The notes beneath the pieces are model-generated. The model made no database searches. It had not been told where the DNA came from and saw only the letters and a list, made by a program, of their open reading frames with translations. Shown in pieces: positions 3,320-45,379 of a stretch of DNA of 45,379 nucleotides. The DNA lies in NCBI RefSeq assembly GCF_006345805.1, contig NW_021834812.1, positions 1 through 45,379 on the forward strand. The letters are read 5' to 3'. The position numbers and the translations under genes were made by a program. The stretch is from Octopus sinensis. Lineage: Eukaryota. How positions within the stretch are numbered: position 1 is the first letter of the stretch; every line of letters begins with the position of its first letter.

Positions 3320-4322
3320 CGCGGTCCGACGTCTCCATTGCGAGCAGTGGCGTGCCTCAAGGTTCAGTGCTTGGGCCCTTGTTGTTCCTAGTCTTCATAA
3401 ATGACTTGCCCAACGACCTCACGCAACACACCCTTCTATTTGCCGACGATATCAAACTGGTCGCTCCTCGCGGTAATATAGAGGATCTTCGTCGATGCCT
3501 CCACCAAATTTGGAAGTGGTCTAACAATTGGGACCTGTGCCTGAACGTGTCAAAGTGCTGTCATCTGCCTGTCGGCTCTACTCCTGCAACTCAACTTGAT
3601 TTCGAGCCGGGTCGTCTGCTGCTGGAGAGGACCGATCAGGTAAAGGACCTAGGTATCTTGGTGGATTCCTCCTTTTCGCCTTCGGCCCAGTGCGTCCATG
3701 CTGCCAACAAAGCACGCGGAATTCTGTTCTTGATTCGACGGTCATTCGGAATGCTCACAGCAGCCATATTCCTACCACTCTATGTCACGCTGGTGAGACC
3801 CATATTGGAGTATGGGATTCAAGCCTCTTCTCCTCTTATCTCCTCAAAACATACACATCTCGAAGAGTCCAGAAGCTGGCTACCCGCATGGTTCATGGTC
3901 TCAAAATTTCCTACGAAGAAAGGCTGAGGACGCTCGACCTTTATTCTCTTGAAAAACGCCGCCGCCGTGGTGATCTCATTCTCATCTCGCCCACAACATC
4001 ATAAGCGGAAAGTGTACCTCTCGAAAGAGCTGTTCTTCACTCCTGCTCCAGAGCGTCGGCTGCGGGGTCATTCCGAAAAGCTCTACTTGCGACGATTTCA
4101 TCTCAATCGAAGAGAGGAGCTTTCTCCGTCCGGGTTGCGGATCCGTGGAACAAGCTGCCAGACGAGATGGTGAAGATGCCGACGACCGCTTTGTTCAAAG
4201 CCTACCTTGACCTCAAGTGGCCTGAACTCTTTACATGAACACCACCTTGTACTTAACTCCATGTCCCCCTACATGGCCTTGTTATTTACTTTTGAGCCAA
4301 ATTAACTAACTAACTAACTAAC
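3320..4322 (+). mobile_element. 5'-truncated, frameshifted CR1/L2-group LINE (RT C-terminal half, 3' UTR, (CTAA)n tail)
   Basis: GVPQGSVLGPLLFLVFIND...LFADDIKL, LVRPILEYG, VQKLATRMV..SYEERL..LDLYSLEKRRRRGDLI, RLRGH and WNKLP motifs spread over three frames; ends in taactaactaacta. Confidence 0.9.
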
Positions 4323-11978: not shown

Positions 11979-12020
<42 letters not shown>

Positions 12021-12079
12021 TAGTAGTAGTAGTAGTTTATGACAGTCGTCGCTGTAGGAGTTAGTACTACTACTACTAT

Positions 12080-12117
<38 letters not shown>

Positions 12118-12454
12118 TCACTACTACTACTACTACTACTACTATCACTACTACTACTACTACTACTGCTGCTGCTGCAACTACTACTTCTACTTCTATT
12201 ATCACCACCACTATCTCTACTACTATTACTACTACTACTACTACTATTGCTACTGCTACTATCACCACTACCATCAACACCACCACAATCATTACTACTA
12301 CTACTACTACTACTACAACTACTACTACTACTACTACTAGCAGTACTGCAATTGCAGCTACTGCTACTACAACTACTACTTCTAATATCACCGCCACCAC
12401 CACCACTATCTCTACTAGTACTACTATCACCACCACCACCATCACCACCACTAT

Positions 12455-12485
<31 letters not shown>

Positions 12486-12660
12486 ACTGCTTCTATTACC
12501 ACCACCACCGCCATCTCTACTAATACTACTACTACTTCTACGACTACTACTACTGCTACTACTACTGCTGCTACTACTATTACTATTATCACCACCACCA
12601 CCACTATTCTATTACTACTACTACTAGCAATACTGCAACTGCAGCTACTGCTACTACATT
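11836..12660. repeat. (TAG)n switching to (CTA/CCA/CTG)n trinucleotide mosaic
   Basis: Direct; the orientation flips near 12040-12060. Confidence 0.95.
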
Positions 12661-12829
12661 AGCAGCATTATGCTGTAATAGAGAATAAAAGATGGTATCA
12701 CCTCACAAATGTCCCTCCACATTCGATCGATAAATTCCAATAAAATCAGAAACATGATTGGAAAATATATAAATAAATAAATAAAATAAATAAATAAAAT
12801 AAATAAATATTCTTCCTTTTCTTCTTAAA

Positions 12830-14740
12830 TGGTTTTTCTTCTCTATATTACCTCAAACCCCCACCAACTCCACCACCCTTCCACCCTCTCCTACCCCTTT
12901 CGGTTTTTATATTATTTCCCACCCACCCGCCATCGACATCTCTCCCACCGAACCTACACTTTCTACCCGCCACCCTTCCACGCCCCTTTTCCTTTTTCTT
13001 TTTCCCTTTTTTCTTCTTTTACCTCCACAGCATTTTTCTTACGTCCTCTTACCTTCTTCTCCACTGCTGTGTCTCTTTGTCTTCTGTTTTTCTTGCCTTC
13101 CTCTCCGCCATCTTTGTCTATTAGCGTCTCCACTTCCGCTCTTCCTTTATGGCCTCTCCTTTAACGTTCTCTATTGCCTCCTTCATCTTCACGTCATCAC
13201 TTTTATTGCTTCCTCTCCTACCAGCTCATTCATTCCTCGCACATTTTACTCTATAGCTTCGCCTTTTCTTTTATATTCTTTTATTTAAAACAACCATCCC
13301 TCATTTCTTTATACTCTTCGCCTTTTTCTTTCTTTTCACTATCACCCTCGTTTCAACATCTTCAATATACCCAATCACAAAAACCCTTTATTCTAGACCT
13401 TAACCCTCTTTTTTATTTTTCTCTTTTTTTTTCTTTGTTTTGTTTTGCTATCACCTCTCTCTTCTTTCACTATTACACTGTCTTCACATCTCTCCTCCCA
13501 CTACTACAAAACCCCCTATATTTCAGACTTAATCCCTCTCTAACAATACCTTTCCAGTTCTTTCTCTAATACTCCTGATCGACGTCTCTCCAACCCTTAC
13601 CTTTATTCCAGACCTTAGCCCTCATTTTTCCTTATTTTCTGTCCCCTCTCTCTCTTCTTTCATTATTACCTTGTCTTCACATCTCTCCTCTCGCTACTAC
13701 ACAAATCCCTATATTTCAAACTTAATCCCTCTCTCTATCTATACCTTTCCAATTCTTTCTCTAATACTCCCGATCGACGTCTCTCCAACCCTTATCTTTA
13801 TTCCAGACCCTTAGCTCTTTCTCTTACTATCACATCTCCCTTTCTTTCTATCTTAACCCCGTGTTGACATCATCTCAACCACCCCCACTCATAAACTATC
13901 GTAATTCCAGACGTTAGCCCTTAATTTTCTTATTGCTTCGCCACTTCTTTCTCTATTAGCCCTATTGTATACTCCCAAGCTATCGTTATTCCAGACCTTA
14001 GACCTCATTTTTTCCAACCGCTCCTCTTTCCTGTCTCTGTCGCCCTTATATCTTCTCTCTTAGAGCATTCTCTATAACCCCCACTTTATCCCAGACATTA
14101 CCCTCCATTCTTTCTTTCTCTATTACCCCCATCTCAACATCTCTCCAACTCCCATCCCTAAACCATCTTTAATCCAGACTTTAGCCCATTTTTTCCTCGC
14201 CTCTAGACCAAAGCCCTTTTTTCCTTGTTTCAAGACCATAGACCTTTTTTCCTTGCCTCCAGACCTTAGCCCTCATTTTTCTATCGGTTCTCCTTTCCTG
14301 CTTCTATTGCCCCCGTCTCAACATCTCTTTTTCCCCACTCTCTATAACCCCCACTTTATTCCAGATGTTAGCCCTCCCTTCTATTGCCTCCTTCTACTCT
14401 TACTCTCTTCCCCCCAAACCCCCAAAACACATTTTCTCTGCCGCCTCTCCATTCTTTCTTTCTGTATTACCCCCACCCCATCTCAGCTACTTTCACCTTT
14501 ATTTCAGTTCTCCTCTCTTTTCTCCTATTCCTTCTTCCTTCTTTTGTCTATTACCCCCGTCTCCACATCCCCTATACTCTCCTCCACACCAAAACCAACA
14601 CTATTCCAGAGCTTAGCCTTTCCTTTTCCTTACTTAGCCCTTCTTTTCCCCATTAATCCCTCCTCAAAATAATCTTTTCTACATCCACTCCCAAACCAAC
14701 ATTATTCTAGACATTAACCCTATTTTTTTCTCTTGTCCAT
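12830..14740. repeat. Pyrimidine-rich degenerate minisatellite
   Basis: The motif TTCCAGACYTTAGCCC recurs roughly a dozen or more times at about 90-100 bp spacing between 13390 and 14720; there is a ~195-bp higher-order duplication at about 13450-13830. Confidence 0.7.
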
Positions 14741-14828
14741 CAGAAAAATAGCATTCACTGAACACATCAAAATTTGCGCCACTATGAACAACCCAACTTC
14801 AGAATTTTTCTCCTCTATAACTTCAGGG

Positions 14829-15048
14829 GTGGAGGCTTAGTGGTTAGGGTGTCAGTAACATGATCGTAAGACTGTGGTTTCGATTCCTGGACCGGGCGAC
14901 GCGTTGTATTCTTGAGCAAAACACTTCATTTTCACGTTGCTCCAGTCCACTCGGCTGGCAACAATGAGTAACGCTGCAATGGACTGGCGTCCCATCCAGC
15001 TGAGGAACACATACGCCATAGGCTTTGAAAAGGGCGTATTTATTATTT
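14829..15048 (+). mobile_element. SINE head B + tail Y (V-domain-like) with a 13-bp TSD
   Basis: TATAACTTCAGGG at 14816-14828 and 15049-15061; contains GCAATGGACTGGCGTCCCATCCAG. Confidence 0.9.
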
Positions 15049-15336
15049 TATAACTTCAGGGATGATTCAACCTATAACCAGGGCATTAGCAAGGAGTCAT
15101 ATTTTATCGCAAAATATAAACCCCTTTTGAATGCTTCCACCACACATAACACTATTACAAGGCCCTTAGAACAATACCCACACAAGTATTAAAGACGATG
15201 TATTCAGAACAGTCACTACCCATGAATTTATTCAGAACAATTCCAATCACTACTACTATAAACACAACAGGTCACTTTTAGGTATCTTGACCATTTAAGA
15301 AGACTCTAGCAACAGCCAACTACTGTCATACCGCTA

Positions 15337-16070
15337 CCGTCTTATTCTTGTTATTTCTCCCCCTCCTCCTCTTCTTCTTCTCCTTCCTCTTCTTCCGCTT
15401 CTTCTTCTTCTCCTTCCTCTTCTTCCGCTTCTTCTTCTTCTTCTTCATCTTCTTCTTCCTCCTCCTCTTCCGCTTCTTCTTCCTCCCCCTCCTCCTCCTT
15501 CTCCTCTTCTTCTTCTCCTTCCTCTTCTTCCGCTTCTTCTCTTCTTCTTCTTCTTCTTCTTCTTCTTCTTCTTCCTCCTCCTCTTCCGCTTCTTCTTCCT
15601 CCACCTCCTCCTCCTCTTCCGCTTCTTCTTCTTCTCTTCTTCTTCTTCTTCTTCTTCTTCTTCTTCTTCCTCCTCTTCTTCTTCTTCTTCCTCCTCCTCT
15701 TCTCTTCTTCTTCTTCTCTCTTCTTCTTCTTCTTCTCCTTCCTCTTCTTCCGCTTCTTCTTCTTCTTCTTCTTCTTCTTCTTCTTCTTCCTCCTCTTCTT
15801 CTTCTTCTTTCTTCTTCTTCTTCTTCTCTTCCTCCTCCTCTTCTCTCTTCTTCCTTCTTCTTCTTCTTCTTCTTCCTTCTCCTCTTCTTCTTCTCCTTCC
15901 TCTTCTTCCGCTTCTTCTTCCTTCTCCTCTTCTTCTTCTTTCTTCTTTCTTCTTCTTCTTCCTCCTCTTCTTCCGCTTCTTCTTCTTCCTTCTCCTCTTC
16001 TTCCGCTTTTCCTTCTTCTTCCTCCTCCTCCCCCTCCTCCTCGCCGTCTCCCTCCTCAGCTGCTGCTGCT
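15337..16070. repeat. (CTT)n/(CCT)n polypyrimidine tract
   Basis: Direct; about 730 bp nearly devoid of A. Confidence 0.95.
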
Positions 16071-27499: not shown

Positions 27500-28420
27500 A
27501 CAGACGGTATCCTCACTGTCCAAGACTCATCATCTCGTCCTCCCCGTCTCCCCCGCACCGCATCCAACCTAATTGTGCGAACCCCACGTACCCCCCACCA
27601 TTTACTTCCTCCCCAAAATCCACAAACCCAACAACCCTGGCCGCCCCATCGTCTCCGCCTGTAACTGCCCCACGGAGCTCATCTCTAAATACCTCGACCG
27701 TGTGTCCTTGCCCCCCTAGTGGCATCTTTCCCCCACATCCACGATACCAACCATGCTCTCCGGCTTTTCAACTCTTTCTCCTCCTCCCGGCTCCTCCAAA
27801 ATCCTTTTTACTATGGACATCCAAAGCCTCTATACTGTTATCCCTCACCACGAAGGACTGCAGGCCTTCGACACTTTCTTGACCTCCGCTCTAACCCTGC
27901 CTGACACCTCCACACTCATTCGTCTGGCCGAACTTGTCCTTACTCTGAACTGCTTCTCGTTCGCGGGCGAGTTCTACCATCAGGTCTCGGGAGTGGCCAT
28001 GGGAACGCGAATGGGCCCCAACTATGCGAACCTGTTCGTTGGCTATGTTGAGGCCCAAATATCTCTAATTTCACTGGTCCCACTCCTGAACTATATGGTC
28101 GTTATATTGACGACATTATCGGTGCCACCTCCTCTCCGCGAACATCTAGATTCCTTCCTCTCTTTCGTCCAATCTTTCCATCCAGCCCTCCACTTCACTT
28201 CCACTATCTCCAACACCTCTGTCTCCTTCCTCGACATTTCGGTTAGCATTCTTCACTCCACTCTTACCACCCTCCATTCACTACAAACACACAGACTCAC
28301 ACTCATACCTCAACTTCTCTTCCTCCCACCCAGAACACACCAAGCTTTCCATCCCCTATTCCCAATTCCTCCGTCTACGTAGGCTCTGTAGTGACGACCA
28401 TGACTTTGAGACTCAGTCTC
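27500..28420 (+). pseudogene. PLE reverse transcriptase, frameshifted
   Basis: [56 protein letters not shown] (shifted frame), VSFLDI, TDSHSYL, HPEHTKLSIPYSQFLRLRRLCS. Confidence 0.92.
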
Positions 28421-28759
28421 AACGTATGGCTCACCACTTCACCCTACGTGGATACCCCCTCACCACTATCCACACCGCCCTTGCCAGAGCACGGTCCGTG
28501 GACCGTGTTCTGCTGCTCTTCTCCCCGAACCCGCCCTGTAGTCTCCGCCTCCCTTTTCCCCTCACTTACCACCCCACGACCCTACGTCTCCAACGCACCA
28601 TTCTTCGAGCTTTCCGTCATCTCCAGTCCGACCCGTCCACTTCACACCTCTTCCCTAACCGACCCCTCCCCTCTTTCAAACGAGCCCACAACCTTCGAGA
28701 CCTTTTGGTCCATAGCTCCTTCCCTGACCTACCTCCCAACCCGGCTCGTTCCCTGCCTC

Positions 28760-29140
28760 TCCGCCCACGTTGCCGCACTTGCCCTACCTCTCCAACACCA
28801 CCCGCCTCACTAGCACCCACCATCGACCCTATCCCATCATCCACTCCTTCACCTGCACCTCCAGCAATATTATCTATTGCATCTCTTGCTCTCTCTGCAA
28901 TTCCTTGTACATCGGACAAACGGGACGCCGCTTGGCTGACCGGTTCGCGGAACACCTTCGTGACATCCACCTTGTGAACGACACACCGGTCTCACGCCAT
29001 TTCCGCTCCACCGGTCACTCCTTGCAACACCTATCTGTGTTCGGTTTGTCCTTACACAGAGGCCATCCGGATTCCCGTTTTGCGCCGTGAACAGGAATTA
29101 ATCTTCTCTCTTCGCTCTTATACGCCATTTGGTCTCAACT
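28760..29140 (+). pseudogene. PLE Cys/His linker and GIY-YIG endonuclease, frameshifted
   Basis: CRTC, HSFTCTSSNIIYCISCSLCNSLYIGQTGRRLADRFAEH, VSRHF, RREQELIFSL..YTPFGLN. Confidence 0.92.
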
Positions 29141-29955
29141 CTCCCCCCCCCTCCTATCTAACCCCCCTCTCCCTCCTCACCTTATCCTTTCCGCCCGACC
29201 CCTACTGTATTCCAGTCCTTCATCCTTTCACCCCTACTTCCCCTTCCCTTCTTCCCTCTTTCCCCCCTCTTCCCCTTCCCTCTGCTCCCTCACTCCCTCT
29301 CTCCCCCCTTCTCTCTCCCCTCTCCCTCTTTTCCTCCTTCATCCCCCTCCTCCCCCCTCTCCTCTTCTCCCTCCTCATCCTCCCCCCTCCCCCTCTTCTC
29401 CTCACTACACCACATGACTTTACACATCACATCACATATGATGTGCCATACTAATACACACACCAACTAATACATACTAATACGTACTAATACATACTAG
29501 TACATACTAATACTTACACCAACCCTATACATACACACGTCCAGACCCCGCATACGCACTTATACTTACACACACACACACACACACACCTATACATACC
29601 AATACGTACTAATACATACTAATACATACTAATACATACACCAACCCCATACATACGCACGTCCAGACCAATCTTACGCACTAATACTCTCTCATACACA
29701 CCACACACACACACACACACCCTTATACATACTAATACATACACCAACCCTATACATACACACATCCAGACCCCTCCCACGCACTTTTAGCTGGTCCCTC
29801 AACCCTTTTATCAACCCTATTATCTCCCTTATTTCGCTCTCGCGTCTCATGTTTGATCTTTGACCTCTGGCCGAATCAGATCGCCATGTTGATTCGTTAG
29901 CTACTGCACGCATTTTTTTTCTCTCCTTCTTTCTGTGTTTTTCTCTCTCTGTGTA

Positions 29956-29992
29956 TCTTCTGTTGAAGAGCGTAGGCTCGAAACGTTAAAGA
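29956..29992 (+). ncRNA. Minimal hammerhead-like motif, atypical core (A6U plus an extra A)
   Basis: UCUU CUGUUGAA GAGC GUAG GCUC GAAAC GUU AAAGA; ACGU palindromic stem III; stem I imperfect in this copy. Confidence 0.5.
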
Positions 29993-30098
29993 CTTGTTTT
30001 ATTTATATTTCCTGAGCGCCATACTAATACAATTGTTCGTTGTTTTCCACCTGCCTTCGTCTTTTGTTTATTTTCATAAAGCTTCCCGTTATTATATA

Positions 30099-37688: not shown

Positions 37689-38202
37689 TCTATATATATA
37701 AAACTGTAGTTGTGTGAGTGTCTGTCTCCTACGATTTAGATTCCTAACTACTCCCACATTTTGCGGTGCAGTTTAACCAAAACCGGGTAGCTTATAGTCG
37801 TGATTAATATCGAGCCCCTCTGGCTATTAGCGCGCGTCTACGATGAGTCTACGATTTTAAAAATAATTTAATATCATTTTTTATTCCATTTTAATGCATA
37901 ATTTTTCGTGTGTCGATGGCGGCGGAGTTGGCGTCCACGCTCACGCCTGCACCTGTGTTGCTTCTCCCCCTTCTTCCCTCCCTCGTGAAGCTGTGGGGAA
38001 GGGAGTGTAAGGAAATCAACGTCGTAATGCGTTGTCAAGGAGACCAGCGTTCTTTTAGAACAACGACTTCATGGCTTGAAGACACCAAAACAGAAATGGC
38101 TAAGAAAGCCCGAATTGGCATCTATAAGGGAAGTAACTCTCTAAAAATGCTTATATAGTTATTTCCCTTACAAACCCGAGCAACGCCGGGCGATACTGCT
38201 AG
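37689..38202 (+). mobile_element. Non-autonomous Helitron (514 bp)
   Basis: A|TCTATATATATAAAA 5' end; 3' GC-rich hairpin CCCG-AGCAACGC-CGGG (38175-38190) followed by CTAG|T; inserted between A and T with no TSD. Confidence 0.8.
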
Positions 38203-38529
38203 TGATTCAATAAAAAAATAATTTGGCGTATAATAAAACTAACTTTACGACCTCATCGTAAAATATGATGTTACTTTCGTAGGGGGTGAGAAAATTAATC
38301 AAACATTTTTTTCGGGGCGGTACGAAGCACAGAAATTGTTGGGAACAGTTAGTACCCTAAATAGAAGGCGGAAAATGGTAATATAGACCTCTAAACAGCT
38401 GGACTGTTGATAGATAGAATGATATTTTTTAAAGGAAACCGCACGTAAATAGACGTGGTAGATACTCCTGATGAAAAGGATCAATCGTGAAGCTGTACGT
38501 CACTCAATACTCACCGTATGTATGTGGGA

Positions 38530-38768
38530 GTGTGAGTAAAGTGTATGAGTGTTTGTGTTCAAGTGTGAGTAAAGTGTATGAGTGTTTGTGTTCAAGTGTG
38601 AGTAAAGTGTATGAGTGTTTGTGTTCAAGTGTGAGTAAAGTGTATGAGTGTTTGTGTTCAAGTGTGAGTAAAGTGTATGAGTGTTTGTGTTCAAGTGTGA
38701 GTAAAGTGTATGAGTGTTTGTGTTCAAGTGTGAGTAAAGTGTATGAGTGTTTGTGTTCAAGTGTGAGT
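38530..38768. repeat. 33-bp perfect minisatellite, about 7.2 copies
   Basis: GTGTGAGTAAAGTGTATGAGTGTTTGTGTTCAA repeated without spacers. Confidence 0.95.
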
Positions 38769-38871
38769 GTGTGTGTGTGTTTAATTGTGTAAGTGTGTGT
38801 GAGAGAAGGTGAGGTTTTGTGAGCGTGTGGTTGTGAGAGAATATGCCTGTGTGAGTGCGTGTGTGTGTGTG

Positions 38872-39406
38872 TGTGAATGTGAGGTTGTATAAGTGAAGGT
38901 GATTGTGTGAATGTGTGTGTATTTGTGATTGTGTGTGTGTGTGTGTGTGAATGTGAGGTTGTATAAGTGAAGGTGATTGTGTGAATGTGTGTGTATTTGT
39001 GATTGTGTGTGTGTGTGTGTGTGTGTGAATGTGAGGTTGTATAAGTGAAGGTGATTGTGGTGATGGTGTGTATTTGTGATTGTGTGTGTGTGTGTGTGTG
39101 AATGTGAGGTTGTATAAGTGAAGGTGATTGTGTGAATTGTGTGGTATTTGTGATTGTGTGTGTGTGTGTGTGTGTGATGTGAGGTTGTATAAGTGAAGGT
39201 GATTGGTGAATGTGTGTGTATTTGTGATTGGGTGTGTGTGTGTGGTGAATGTGAGGTGTATAAGTGAAGGTGATTGTGTGAATGTGTGTGTATTTGTGGG
39301 ATTGTGGTGTGTGTGTGTGTGTGTGAATGTGAGGTTGTATAAGTGAAGGTGATTGTGTGAATGTGTGTGTATTTGTGATTGTGTGTGTGTGTGTGTGTGA
39401 ATGTGA
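38872..39406. repeat. ~68-bp TG-rich minisatellite, about 8 copies
   Basis: GAATGTGAGGTTGTATAAGTGAAGGTGATTG... followed by (TG)n in each unit. Confidence 0.92.
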
Positions 39407-39664
39407 AGTTATGTGCTCGTGTGTATGTGCGAGTGTGAATGTAAGCTTCTGTGTGTGTTTGGGGAGAGCGTGTAAAAGTGTGCTTGTGTTTGTGTTTGCG
39501 TGTGTGTAAGTGTGTGTCTGTGTTCATGTGTATGTATGAGGATTGTGTCTGCGTGTGTATGTGTGTGTGTATGTGTGTGCTTGTGTGTTTGTGTTTGTTT
39601 GTATGTGTGGTTGTGTGTATATTAGTGTGTTTATCGGTGTGTGTGTGTGTGTCTGCGTGTTTGT

Positions 39665-39990
39665 GAGTGTGTATGTATGCATGTATTTACTTATGTATGT
39701 GTGCGTGCGTGTGTGTGTGTGTGTATGTATGTATGCGTGTGTTTACCTATGTGTGTGCGTGTGTGCGTGTATGTATGCATGTATTTACTTATGTATGTGT
39801 GCGTGCGTGTGTGTGTGTGTGTATGTATGTATGCGTGTGTTTACCTATGTGTGTGCGTGTATGCGTGTATGTATGCATGTATTTACTTATGTATGTGTGC
39901 GTGCGTGTGCGTGCGTGTGTGTGTGTATGTATGTATGTATGCGTGTGTTTACCTATGTGTGCGTGTGTGCGTGTGCGTGTGCGTGTGAAT
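39665..39990. repeat. ~100-bp TG/TATG minisatellite, about 3 copies
   Basis: Alternating GCATGTATTTACTTATG and GCGTGTGTTTACCTATG. Confidence 0.85.
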
Positions 39991-40248
39991 GCGTATTGTA
40001 TGGCTGAATGTCGATAGTATTTCGAGATGGCATTTTGATTGAACAACCATCAGCTCGGCAGGGAAGCAAAATATGTCTAAGGCAAGAACGGTGATGTTTT
40101 CGTTGACGGACAAGCAGTGTATGTCATCAGCCTGTGGGTAAACTATCCGTTATATACATCCATATATACACAAATATATACATTCACACACACACACACA
40201 CACACGCAGACACAGACGCACAGACGCACAAACAAACATGCACACATA

Positions 40249-44160: not shown

Positions 44161-44343
44161 CTTTATAGTTAGTTACATGGCCATGTACTAATGCTTTAAC
44201 CATATGGTTTCATATCAAGCGGAGGCAATTTAGCAATCATCAGACACGGCTGAATGGAGAAGTTACGGTGAGCAATGATGACATTTGTTGACATTTCCAG
44301 TCAACAAACCTTTCACCACGGACAGCTTCCCATATATACATAC

Positions 44344-44385
<42 letters not shown>

Positions 44386-44521
44386 CATATATACAAATGT
44401 ATATATATAGATACATATAAATATATATATATAAATACTGTTCTAGATCTATACATAAATATATGTCTGTGTGCATATACAACATATGTATGTAGTATAT
44501 ATGTATATGCGCATATATTTA

Positions 44522-44615
<94 letters not shown>

Positions 44616-44671
44616 GAAAATATTAAAATAACTAAGTCTCTCTAAAAGAGAACAGAGCAGCGTTCCCGAAA

Positions 44672-45191
44672 ATAATAGTTATCGCCATACTAATATGGCA
44701 TTCTTATAAAATAAGAAAAAAGCTGTCCGCTTATTAGCTCCATGAGGCCATCGCCTTAAGTTAGCTATTTGATACACAAACTGTATCCATATAACCTTCG
44801 AACAAGGGAGGTCAGTCGCTCCACACTACTTGACCGGCAGCTACAGACGCGTTTCGGAGTATTGCCCCTTTTAGTTATTTTAATATTTCTATTATTGAAA
44901 ACAAGTGGATGTATTCCACCGAAACTAGGTAAATAAAACCATCGAACAGAGATTGTCGGAAGCGACACCTACTGGCTGGCTACGCTGCATTGAAAAGGGG
45001 CAATACTCCGAAACGCGTCTGTAGCTGCCGGTCAAGTAGTGTGGAGCGACTGACCTCCCTTGTTCGAAGGTTATATGGATACAGTTTGTGTATCAAATAG
45101 CTAACTTAAGGCGATGGCCTCATGGAACTAATAAGCGGACAGCTTTTTTCTTATTTTTATAAGAATGCCATATTAGTATGGCGATAACTAT

Positions 45192-45194
<3 letters not shown>
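44672..45194. mobile_element. Fold-back element: 201/202-bp inverted arms around a 120-bp spacer, next to (AT)n
   Basis: 44672-44872 vs 44993-45194 differ by one substitution and one indel. Confidence 0.93.
44984..45025 (+). ncRNA. Predicted minimal dimer-type hammerhead with a U3-A8 core
   Basis: GCUGCA UUGAAAA GGGG CAAUA CUCC GAAAC GC GUC UGUAGC: 6-bp stem I, 4-bp stem II, ACGCGU palindrome, GUC site. Confidence 0.7.
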
Positions 45195-45222
<28 letters not shown>

Positions 45223-45379
45223 TTATGTATATATATATATAAATATATATATATACATATATATATATATGCATATATATGATATATGATATATGTGTGC
45301 GTGTGTGTGCATATATATAAGTATATGTGTGTGTGTGTTCATCATTATATATATATATGAAATAAAGTCCTTAAAGCTT

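What the first reader, a model, noticed from the sequence alone, without database searches (positions are those of the whole stretch)
44672..45194. Young fold-back element with a U3-A8 hammerhead, its left arm broken inside the catalytic core
Seen: 201/202-bp arms differing by one substitution and one indel. The plus strand at 44984-45025 forms a full HHR with GUC site and ACGCGU palindrome. The inverted left copy ends right after AAAA of the core (44872), so it keeps only the 3' half. Established: PLEs often leave inverted terminal-repeat structures. Inference: a recent 5'-inverted PLE-type insertion in (AT)n. Read-through RNA would form ~200 bp of dsRNA that sequesters most of the ribozyme, and would be a likely ADAR or siRNA substrate.
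Basis: partly seen in the sequence, partly recalled or inferred. Interest (0 to 1): 0.72.

Follow-up and report, generated by a model that had tools for sequence, protein, structure and literature searches.

The report
Head-to-head hammerhead retroelement insertion in (AT)n
Two nearly identical, oppositely oriented, non-coding copies of a small retroelement with a hammerhead self-cleaving RNA motif sit inside an (AT)n microsatellite of an animal genome; the layout matches a known Penelope-type insertion pattern, so the finding is real but ordinary.

Summary
Arms 44672-44872 and 44993-45194 are inverted copies differing by one substitution and one indel. The + strand at 44984-45025 fits a type-I hammerhead: 6-bp helix I, 4-bp helix II, a 1-bp helix III inside the palindrome ACGCGU, a GUC cleavage site and a U3-A8 core. 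It is the only such motif in the window. RNAfold recovers the topology unprompted, and two copies are predicted to dimerise through ACGCGU. Rfam does not detect it.

The left copy starts at A6 of the core, so it is truncated as described.

The element is probably larger than reported. The left copy carries 62 extra nt (44610-44671). Their last 26 nt recur, inverted, at 44871-44895, at the 5' end of the right copy. Both outer junctions read CTATTAT|(AT)n. I read this as a non-coding, Penelope-type or retrozyme-like element. It was copied from both ends of one break in (AT)n, with a one-sided "tail", from a head-to-tail parent of about 361 nt.

All of these traits are published for Penelope-like elements, including the U3-A8 core. 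No homologue could be retrieved, so conservation, the parent element and cleavage remain untested. This is a new member of a known kind, of modest interest.

The parts
44530..44609 (.). Left flank: (AT)n microsatellite, the target.
   Evidence: Sequence. Joining 44609 to 45195 restores an uninterrupted (AT)n tract.
44610..44635 (-). Segment x. It is the distal part of the extra 3' extension ('tail') of the left, inverted copy, and the reverse complement of 44871-44895.
   Evidence: blastn gives 26 nt at 96% identity; local alignment gives 25/26 with one 1-nt indel. Read in the copy's own sense, it ends CTATTAT|(AT)n, the same junction as the right copy.
44636..44671 (-). Segment y. It is the proximal 36 nt of the extension and is present only in the left copy.
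   Evidence: In sense orientation the left copy continues ...AACTATTAT|TTTCGGGAACGC... past the point where the right copy meets (AT)n. Whether x and y belong to the element or to the old flank is inferred, not shown.
44672..44872 (-). Left arm: an inverted, 5'-truncated copy. It starts at core position A6 and keeps only the 3' part of the hammerhead.
   Evidence: Matches the reverse complement of 44993-45194 at 200 of 202 aligned columns.
44871..44895 (+). Segment x', at the 5' end of the right copy. It duplicates the tail end of the left copy. Its first two bases (TT, 44871-44872) are shared with the left arm, giving a 2-nt microhomology at the inversion junction.
44896..44992 (+). Unique part of the right copy. 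It holds the 5' strand of the long closing stem (about 44940-44983), the 5' strand of helix I (44984-44989) and U3, U4, G5 (44990-44992).
   Evidence: Minimum-free-energy structures. 44940-44989 pairs with 45020-45068.
44984..45025 (+). Type-I hammerhead motif with a U3-A8 core. Helix I is 6 bp. Helix II is 4 bp (44997-45000 with 45006-45009), with loop CAAUA. G12-A15.1 is 45010-45013. The helix III palindrome ACGCGU is 45013-45018. C17 is 45019, with the predicted cleavage just 3' of it.
   Evidence: Not found by Rfam.
44993..45194 (+). Right arm: the part of the sense-oriented copy shared with the left copy. Its 3' end is CTATTAT|(AT)n.
45195..45290 (.). Right flank: (AT)n and (ATGT)n microsatellite, the target.

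Best explanation
The locus 44610-45194 is one insertion event of a small, non-coding retroelement that carries a hammerhead. The element is of the kind mobilised by Penelope-like elements: a pLTR-like sequence or an animal 'non-LTR retrozyme'.

Proposed mechanism (inferred):
1. An endonuclease broke an (AT)n tract.
2. Both DNA ends primed reverse transcription of element RNA, so the two cDNAs point their 3' ends outward and meet head to head.
3. The right copy (44871/3-45194, 322 nt) started at an internal site, ...AACUAUUAU. It ran through the whole hammerhead.
4. The left copy (44610-44872, 263 nt, inverted) started 62 nt further downstream at a second ...CUAUUAU site. It therefore carries a one-sided 'tail'. 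It stopped inside the catalytic core, at A6.
5. The two ends were joined at a 2-nt microhomology.

The last 26 nt of the tail equal the first 25 nt of the right copy. The template must therefore have been longer than one unit. It was either a head-to-tail multimer or a circular RNA with a period of about 361 nt.

In the parent, two hammerheads would pair through the ACGCGU palindrome into a double hammerhead and cut the multimer into units.

At this locus there is only one complete ribozyme. It is flanked by a perfect antisense copy of most of itself. The insertion is most likely an inert, dead-on-arrival copy. Any read-through RNA would fold into a ~200-bp hairpin instead of an active ribozyme.

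Shown: the sequence anatomy, the motif and the predicted folds. Inferred: the retrotransposition route, the tail, the periodic parent and the catalytic activity.
For: - Arms at 99% identity, and inner boundaries that cut through one continuous structured RNA domain. This is what 5' truncation of a cDNA gives.
- A hammerhead with canonical animal type-I dimensions and G10.1-C11.1. It is the only hit in the window. The expected count is 0.053 per window; the strict version gave 0 hits in 48 Mb.
- The minimum-free-energy fold equals the hammerhead topology, z = -3.7.
- A predicted double hammerhead through ACGCGU/ACGCGU: -82.9 kcal/mol against 2 x -38.4.
- Both outer junctions read CTATTAT|(AT)n, and the joined flanks form a clean (AT)n tract.
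- The 26-nt x/x' overlap.
- No open stretch longer than 55 codons.
- GC 0.40, and a strongly self-paired RNA, z = -5.6 to -5.7.
- A Penelope-like remnant in the same window, so the machinery exists in this genome.

Literature:
- U3-A8 covariation, and paired hammerheads on opposite strands 100-700 bp apart, in Penelope-like elements (PMC4209133).
- A small palindromic helix III in hammerheads of Penelope-like elements from several animals.
- An inverted 5'-truncated adjacent copy, a one-sided 30-40-bp tail and a (TA)n insertion bias (PMC8557442).
- A purified Penelope-like element protein cleaves and extends both strands, and starts at two sites that define the tail (PMC11167929).
- Animal retrozyme units of 150-450 bp with GC below 50% (PMC7229834).
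- Monomeric retrozyme copies are common, and retrozymes are related to pLTRs (bioRxiv 10.64898/2026.07.22.740005).
Against: - No second locus of this family was found anywhere, so there is no conservation or covariation evidence and no parent. Negative searches.
- No Rfam hammerhead model matches.
- The arm has no similarity to the resident Penelope-like remnant, and no hammerhead lies near that remnant.
- The 'tail' is 62 nt, whereas the published range is 30-40 bp.
- Segments x and y could instead be old flanking DNA. In that case the periodic-parent inference fails.
- (AT)n on both sides hides any target-site duplication.
- The relaxed motif would occur by chance about 1.2 times per Mb, so genome-wide it is not rare. 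The strict descriptor was chosen post hoc.
Confidence: 0.6

Rival explanations
1. Same kind of insertion, but with the reader's boundaries. Here 44610-44671 (x and y) is old flanking DNA, and both copies started at the single site ...CTATTAT. The 25 nt at 44871-44895 would then be a templated filler, copied in inverted orientation from the nearby flank when the two cDNA ends were joined. No tail and no periodic parent would be implied.
For: The arms end at exactly the same nucleotide, as expected for one defined reverse-transcription start site. At 62 nt the 'tail' is longer than the published 30-40 bp. Nothing in the window shows y or x attached to another copy.
Against: It needs two template switches, with a template 236 nt away from the junction. 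It leaves unexplained why x itself begins with (AT)n|ATAATAG, the same junction as the right end. It also makes the empty site (AT)n-x-y-(AT)n rather than a clean (AT)n tract.
Confidence: 0.17
2. A DNA-level rearrangement rather than two-ended reverse transcription. A single sense copy, or a short tandem, sat in a fragile (AT)n tract. It was partly duplicated in inverted orientation by replication template switching or by hairpin-mediated repair.
For: Long (AT)n tracts form cruciforms and are known breakage sites (general knowledge). The junction has only 2-nt microhomology, which fits microhomology-mediated repair as well.
Against: Each copy ends independently at a CTATTAT|(AT)n junction, and the two copies end at different points of the element. 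An in-place inverted duplication does not predict this. The layout matches the documented Penelope-like insertion pattern point by point.
Confidence: 0.1
3. A fold-back or MITE-type DNA transposon with roughly 200-bp terminal inverted repeats, moved by a transposase. The hammerhead-like motif would be incidental or a captured fragment.
For: Long, nearly perfect terminal inverted repeats, small size and no coding capacity. A TA duplication cannot be excluded inside (AT)n.
Against: There is no target-site duplication of 2-12 bp at the boundaries 44672/45194. With the boundaries 44610/45194 the two ends share only 7 nt. The inner arm boundary cuts a continuous RNA domain that is complete in only one copy. 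That indicates truncation of a longer unit, not a designed repeat.
Confidence: 0.07
4. The hammerhead is a chance match, and the repeat is an unrelated inverted duplication or an assembly artefact.
For: No Rfam hit. The relaxed motif occurs about 1.2 times per Mb in random sequence. The degenerate core pattern also hit an unrelated GC-rich bacterial contig that has no helix I.
Against: Several features were not used in the search: a 6-bp helix I, a 4-bp helix II with G10.1-C11.1, a palindromic helix III, and about 40 further base pairs closing helix I. The strict version gave 0 hits in 48 Mb. The fold z-scores are -3.7 and -5.7. The arms differ at two positions and are separated by 120 nt, unlike missed-adapter palindromes.
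Confidence: 0.06

Closest known systems
Hammerheads in the pLTRs of Penelope-like elements (Cervera & de la Pena 2014, PMC4209133)
   Same: Type-I topology. Helix III is reduced to one pair inside a palindrome, so the active form is a dimer. The U3-A8 covariation is documented in Schistosoma Cercyon elements. Motifs mostly occur as single dispersed copies, or as pairs on opposite strands 100-700 bp apart.
   Different: The helices here have canonical animal type-I sizes: 6-bp helix I with an internal loop, 4-bp helix II, and no bulge between A9 and G10.1. The 'min-HHR' has a 7-8-bp helix II and a 4-5-bp helix I. No reverse transcriptase or endonuclease ORF is attached, and there is no similarity to the Penelope-like remnant in the window.
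Animal non-LTR retrozymes (Cervera & de la Pena 2020, PMC7229834; Li et al. 2026 preprint)
   Same: Non-coding, GC 0.40, a type-I hammerhead, strongly self-paired RNA, and an inferred unit of about 361 nt within the 150-450-bp range. Monomeric dispersed copies are known, and the family is thought to depend on Penelope-like elements.
   Different: This locus is not a tandem array. It holds one complete and one truncated copy, head to head. The tandem or circular parent is only inferred from a 26-nt overlap. No circular RNA evidence exists.
Penelope-like element insertion architecture (Craig et al. 2021, PMC8557442; Frangieh et al. 2024, PMC11167929)
   Same: 5' truncation, an adjacent inverted 5'-truncated copy that forms inverted repeats, an optional extension at one end only, and an AT-rich or (TA)n target. 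The enzyme cleaves and extends both strands and uses two reverse-transcription start sites.
   Different: The extension is 62 nt rather than 30-40 bp. No ORF is present. Both start sites share a CUAUUAU motif next to (AT)n, whereas the purified anole element's protein started at sites not homologous to the target.
LINE-1 twin priming and dual priming (PMC2837659)
   Same: Two cDNAs are primed from the two strands of one target site. This gives an inverted 5' segment joined to a sense 3' segment at a microhomology.
   Different: A different enzyme family (GIY-YIG endonuclease, not APE-type), no poly(A), and no recognisable target-site duplication. The two segments overlap by 26 nt and share 201 nt, because the template was longer than one unit.

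Membership tests
Hammerhead ribozyme, type I | Conserved core: C3 U4 G5 A6 N7 G8 A9, G12 A13 A14, A15.1-U16.1, H17 | tested here: met
   UUGAAAA ... GAAA ... U C. Positions 3 and 8 are U and A instead of C and G. C3-G8 is a Watson-Crick pair in the active fold (PMC3884650). The U3-A8 covariant occurs naturally in hammerheads of Penelope-like elements (PMC4209133).
Hammerhead ribozyme, type I | Three helices around the core, with helix I open-ended | tested here: met
   The RNAfold minimum-free-energy structure of 44962-45048 gives helix I (6 bp, then an internal loop, then 12 more bp) and helix II (4 bp). Helix III is only A15.1-U16.1 in the monomer. In the predicted dimer it becomes a 6-bp ACGCGU/ACGCGU helix.
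Hammerhead ribozyme, type I | Match to a curated covariance model (Rfam hammerhead families) | tested here: not met
   No hammerhead family matched at gathering score on the window, nor at E<=10 on 1,080 nt or on 91 nt. This is plausibly due to the U3-A8 core and the 1-bp helix III, but that explanation was not tested.
Hammerhead ribozyme, type I | Conservation or covariation of core and helices among homologues | tested here: inconclusive
   Only the two local copies exist, and they are identical over the shared ribozyme part. No other copy was found in the window, in metagenome, viral or prokaryotic contigs, or among predicted proteins.
Hammerhead ribozyme, type I | Site-specific self-cleavage | not testable with these tools
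   Needs in vitro transcription of a dimeric construct.
Penelope-like element (autonomous) | ORF encoding a reverse transcriptase and a GIY-YIG endonuclease | tested here: not met
   The longest open stretch in the element, or in the inferred unit, is 55 codons. The element is therefore at most a non-autonomous derivative.
Penelope-like element insertion signature | Inverted 5'-truncated copy adjacent to a sense copy, with 3' ends outward | tested here: met
   definition in PMC8557442.
Penelope-like element insertion signature | Optional 30-40-bp tail at one end only | tested here: inconclusive
   A 62-nt extension sits at the left end only. Its length is outside the published range, and it cannot be shown to belong to the element without other copies.
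Penelope-like element insertion signature | AT-rich or (TA)n target | tested here: met
   (AT)n lies on both sides, and the joined flanks give a continuous (AT)n tract.
Penelope-like element insertion signature | Sequence similarity to the pLTR of an autonomous element in the same genome | tested here: not met
   There is no similarity to the only Penelope-like remnant available, at about 27.6-29.2 kb, and that remnant has no recognisable hammerhead. The rest of the genome could not be searched.
Animal non-LTR retrozyme | Head-to-tail tandem repeats of 150-450 bp, each with a type-I hammerhead | tested here: not met
   There is no direct repeat of the unit at this locus. A period of about 361 nt is only inferred from the x/x' overlap. 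Monomeric derivatives are, however, described for the family.
Animal non-LTR retrozyme | Non-coding, GC below 50%, highly self-paired RNA | tested here: met
   Longest open stretch 55 codons. GC 0.40; circular minimum free energy -108.7 kcal/mol, z = -5.6; right copy alone z = -5.7.
Animal non-LTR retrozyme | Expressed as circular RNA | not testable with these tools
   No transcriptome data available.
MITE or fold-back DNA transposon | Terminal inverted repeats flanked by a fixed-length target-site duplication | tested here: not met
   There is no 2-12-bp duplication at 44672/45194. With the boundaries 44610/45194 the ends share only 7 nt, and a TA duplication is undecidable inside (AT)n.

The most novel reading that the evidence does not exclude
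The locus may be a sequence fossil of a Penelope-like enzyme copying a longer-than-unit retrozyme RNA, either multimeric or circular, from both ends of one (TA)n break. It would have used two reverse-transcription start sites marked by the same CUAUUAU motif. The ribozyme would be the first canonical-architecture animal type-I hammerhead with a natural U3-A8 core. If confirmed in other copies, this would give direct insertion-site evidence that animal retrozymes are mobilised by Penelope-like machinery. At present that link rests on co-occurrence and pLTR phylogeny. It would also supply a natural U3-A8 ribozyme for testing the C3-G8 pair in a tertiary-stabilised context.
Probability: 0.3. Interest if true: 0.45.

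Novelty: new member of a known kind. Interest (0 to 1): 0.3.

Why it matters
The locus is a clean, young example in which every junction of a Penelope-type head-to-head insertion can be read to the base. Both start sites, the truncation point inside the ribozyme core and the 2-nt joining microhomology are all visible.

Such loci help to test the in vitro model that the Penelope-like enzyme cuts and extends both strands and starts at two sites. They also help to test the proposal that animal retrozymes ride on that machinery.

It does not reveal a new kind of element. The hammerhead type, the U3-A8 covariation, the inverted 5'-truncated copy, the one-sided tail and the (TA)n target are all in the literature.

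For genome annotation, the point is practical. Rfam models miss this ribozyme, and the fold-back could be mislabelled as a MITE.

Tried and rejected
1. Other copies in the window: blastn with word size 9 found only the two arms and the x/x' pair.
2. External copies by exact-ORF look-up of six ORFs from the window. Four were from the element (38, 67, 36 and 36 aa); two were from the LINE and Penelope-like remnants. None is on record.
3. External copies by exact DNA pattern. The 20-mer CTCCGAAACGCGTCTGTAGC gave 0 hits in metagenome, viral and prokaryote-genome contigs. A 25-mer from the arm gave 0 hits in viral contigs.
4. A degenerate core pattern in metagenomes gave one hit (L003). It is a GC-rich bacterial contig with no helix I, and I rejected it as chance.
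5. A protein search with four concatenated reading frames of the arm, meant to catch spurious ORF calls on other copies, found nothing.
6. A search with the reverse-transcriptase piece of the resident Penelope-like remnant gave best hits at 63% identity, on unnamed ENA metagenome contigs. The two loci fetched (L001, L002) have no similarity to the element and no hammerhead. The source organism therefore stays unidentified. A decapod crustacean is only a guess from the microsatellite load (7.4% perfect SSRs).
7. Rfam found no hammerhead. The sub-threshold mir-297, mir-466 and similar hits in the flanks are (TA/TG)n hairpins, far below gathering score.
8. Supplementary files of PMC4209133 are not held, so I could not compare with the shrimp hammerheads shown there.
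9. A coding function for the element is rejected: no open stretch exceeds 55 codons, and none has a homologue.

Full report
**1. The observation**

The inverted repeat is real. The repeat finder reports a gapless 165-nt core (44708-44872 / 44993-45157, 99% complementary, 120 nt apart). A global alignment extends it to 44672-44872 (201 nt) against the reverse complement of 44993-45194 (202 nt). The arms differ by one indel in an A-run (44708/45158) and one substitution (44738/45127).

The + strand at 44984-45025 reads GCUGCA-UUGAAAA-GGGG(CAAUA)CUCC-GAAA-CGCG-U-C^UGUAGC. That is a type-I hammerhead with these features:
- a 6-bp helix I;
- a 4-bp helix II closed by G10.1-C11.1;
- the invariant G12 A13 A14;
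- an A15.1-U16.1 pair inside the palindrome ACGCGU;
- a GUC site, with C17 at 45019;
- U and A at core positions 3 and 8 instead of C and G.

The left arm ends at 44872, the complement of A6 (44993).

**2. Is the ribozyme motif more than chance?**

My descriptor requires C3-G8 or U3-A8, helix II of at least 3 bp, GAAA, UH, and helix I of at least 4 bp. It finds one site in the whole window on both strands, and that site is this one.

Control runs gave:
- 0.053 hits per window in 300 dinucleotide-preserving shuffles;
- 1.2 hits per Mb in 48 Mb of first-order Markov sequence.

The bare motif would therefore occur by chance many times in a gigabase genome.

A stricter version requires a palindromic helix III, helix I of at least 6 bp, helix II of at least 4 bp and G10.1-C11.1. 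It gave no hit in either control. I defined it after seeing the motif, so it is only indicative.

Independent support comes from folding:
- RNAfold of 44962-45048, given no constraint, returns the hammerhead topology as the minimum-free-energy structure. Helix I continues through a small internal loop (UAC/U) into 12 more pairs (-38.4 kcal/mol, z = -3.7).
- In the whole right copy, helix I is closed by about 45 imperfect pairs between 44940-44989 and 45020-45068 (z = -5.7).
- Two copies of the 87-nt segment are predicted to form the classic double hammerhead. The ACGCGU palindromes pair between molecules (-82.9 kcal/mol against 2 x -38.4).

Against this, no Rfam hammerhead family matches, even at E<=10 on a 91-nt stretch. 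No homologue is available to show conservation.

**3.

blastn of the element against the window found a second inverted pair. 44610-44635 is the reverse complement of 44871-44895 (26 nt with one 1-nt indel).

Read in the sense of the ribozyme, the two copies are:
- left copy: arm, then 36 nt (y'), then 26 nt (x'), then (AT)n;
- right copy: x', then 97 unique nt, then arm, then (AT)n.

Other details:
- Both outer junctions read CTATTAT|ATATAT.
- Joining 44609 to 45195 restores an uninterrupted (AT)n tract.
- The boundaries 44672/45194 have no target-site duplication of 2-12 bp.
- The inversion junction has a 2-nt microhomology (TT, 44871-44872).

The element has no open stretch longer than 55 codons. 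A protein search with its four longest frames found nothing.

**4. Context**

The window is animal DNA rich in microsatellites (7.4% perfect SSRs). It contains two other retroelement remnants:
- a LINE-type reverse-transcriptase fragment at 3352-3927 (RVT_1, E = 7e-13);
- a degraded, frameshifted, 5'-truncated Penelope-like element at about 27.57-29.16 kb on the + strand. Its reverse-transcriptase motifs include [16 protein letters not shown], and its C-terminal GIY-YIG motif is IIYCISCSLCNSLYIGQTGRR.

Penelope-like machinery has therefore been present in this genome. That remnant shares no sequence with the element and has no recognisable hammerhead nearby.

**5. What it most likely is**

The layout matches published traits of Penelope-like element insertions.
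- Craig et al. 2021 (PMC8557442) describe frequent 5' truncation, an inverted 5'-truncated copy next to the sense copy, an optional 30-40-bp tail at one end only, hammerheads in the pLTR, and a (TA)n insertion bias.
- Frangieh et al. 2024 (PMC11167929) show that a purified Penelope-like element protein cleaves and extends both DNA strands. It starts reverse transcription at two internal sites, and the spacing between them defines the tail.
- Cervera & de la Pena 2014 (PMC4209133) report the U3-A8 covariation in hammerheads of Penelope-like elements. They also report hammerhead pairs on opposite strands 100-700 bp apart, a small palindromic helix III in several animals, and action as dimers.

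The element is non-coding, has GC 0.40, and gives a highly self-paired RNA. Its inferred unit is about 361 nt (arm 202 + y' 36 + x' 26 + unique 97; circular fold z = -5.6). It therefore also resembles the animal non-LTR retrozymes (PMC7229834). A 2026 preprint derives these from pLTRs and notes that many copies are monomers.

**6. Proposed mechanism (inferred)**

1. A break formed in (AT)n.
2. Both 3' ends primed cDNA synthesis on element RNA. This corresponds to twin priming on one RNA, or dual priming on two, in LINE-1 terminology (PMC2837659).
3. The right cDNA began at the first CUAUUAU site and ran 322 nt, through the ribozyme.
4. The left cDNA began at the second CUAUUAU site, 62 nt downstream, and ran 263 nt to A6.
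5. The ends were joined at TT.

The tail end (x') equals the sequence upstream of the unique segment. The template therefore contained the unit more than once, as a multimeric or circular RNA or a partial tandem.

In such a parent, neighbouring hammerheads would pair through ACGCGU and cut the RNA into units (prediction only).

At this locus only one complete ribozyme is left. A read-through + strand RNA would form a ~200-bp perfect hairpin (-409.6 kcal/mol). That hairpin takes A6 through the 3' strand of helix I out of the ribozyme fold. The copy is therefore probably inert.

Whether it is transcribed, edited or diced is unknown.

**7. Rivals**

- (a) x and y are old flank, and x' is a templated filler. 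This fits the identical arm ends. It needs two template switches, and it leaves the (AT)n|ATAATAG junction at 44610 as a coincidence.
- (b) A DNA-level inverted duplication in a fragile (AT)n tract. This does not predict two independent CTATTAT|(AT)n ends.
- (c) A MITE or fold-back transposon. There is no target-site duplication, the ends are asymmetrical, and the arm boundary cuts a continuous RNA domain.
- (d) A chance motif or an assembly artefact. This is unlikely given the features not used in the search.

None of these can be excluded without other copies.

**8. Searches that failed**

No eukaryotic nucleotide collection was available.
- Exact-ORF look-ups found nothing on record.
- Exact-pattern scans of metagenome, viral and prokaryotic contigs were empty.
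- A degenerate core scan gave one chance hit, L003.
- A frame-translation protein search found nothing.
- The reverse-transcriptase search reached only relatives at 63% identity or less, on unnamed ENA contigs without the element.

The organism is unidentified.

**9. Verdict**

Every trait is already described for Penelope-like elements and retrozymes, so this is a new member of a known kind. Interest is modest, about 0.3. The locus is useful as a base-resolved example of two-ended priming and as a natural U3-A8 hammerhead in a canonical type-I frame.

Noticed in passing
window 27570-29160 (+): A degraded, 5'-truncated Penelope-like element. Its reverse-transcriptase motifs ([18 protein letters not shown] ... 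YHQVSGVAMGTRMGPNYANLFVGYVE ... [quoted passage not shown] FGLN) are spread over three frames, with stops. Its best database relatives are 63% identical or less, on unnamed ENA contigs. It has no hammerhead nearby and no similarity to the fold-back element.
   Followed up: partly
window 3352-3927 (+), possibly from about 2900: A LINE-type reverse-transcriptase fragment (Pfam RVT_1, E = 7e-13, C-terminal half of the domain).
   Followed up: partly
window 44329-44542 and 45202-45355: Sub-threshold Rfam matches to mir-297, mir-466, mir-3149 and similar families (up to 46 bits against gathering scores of 75-100). They lie in (TA)n/(TG)n tracts that form hairpins by composition. I take them for low-complexity artefacts.
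   Followed up: partly
window 12000-16000, 28000-30000 and 38000-40000: Blocks with extreme GC skew (-0.65, -0.57 and +0.64 in 2-kb windows). They coincide with CT-rich, AC-rich and trinucleotide low-complexity tracts. Overall, 7.4% of the window is perfect microsatellite, with (AT)n and (AC)n dominant.
   Followed up: partly
window 44940-45068 (+): The hammerhead sits at the tip of an imperfect stem of about 45 bp, formed by 44940-44989 and 45020-45068. Part of the left arm (about 44797-44845) is therefore also an imperfect direct repeat of the unique segment. The locus thus holds three mutually related stretches.
   Followed up: partly
L003 8813-8841 (JGI contig Ga0114939_10003973): A GC-rich, ORF-dense, bacterial-looking contig matches the degenerate core pattern TTGAAAAGGG...CCGAAACGCGTC but has no helix I pairing. 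It shows how easily the bare core occurs by chance.
   Followed up: yes
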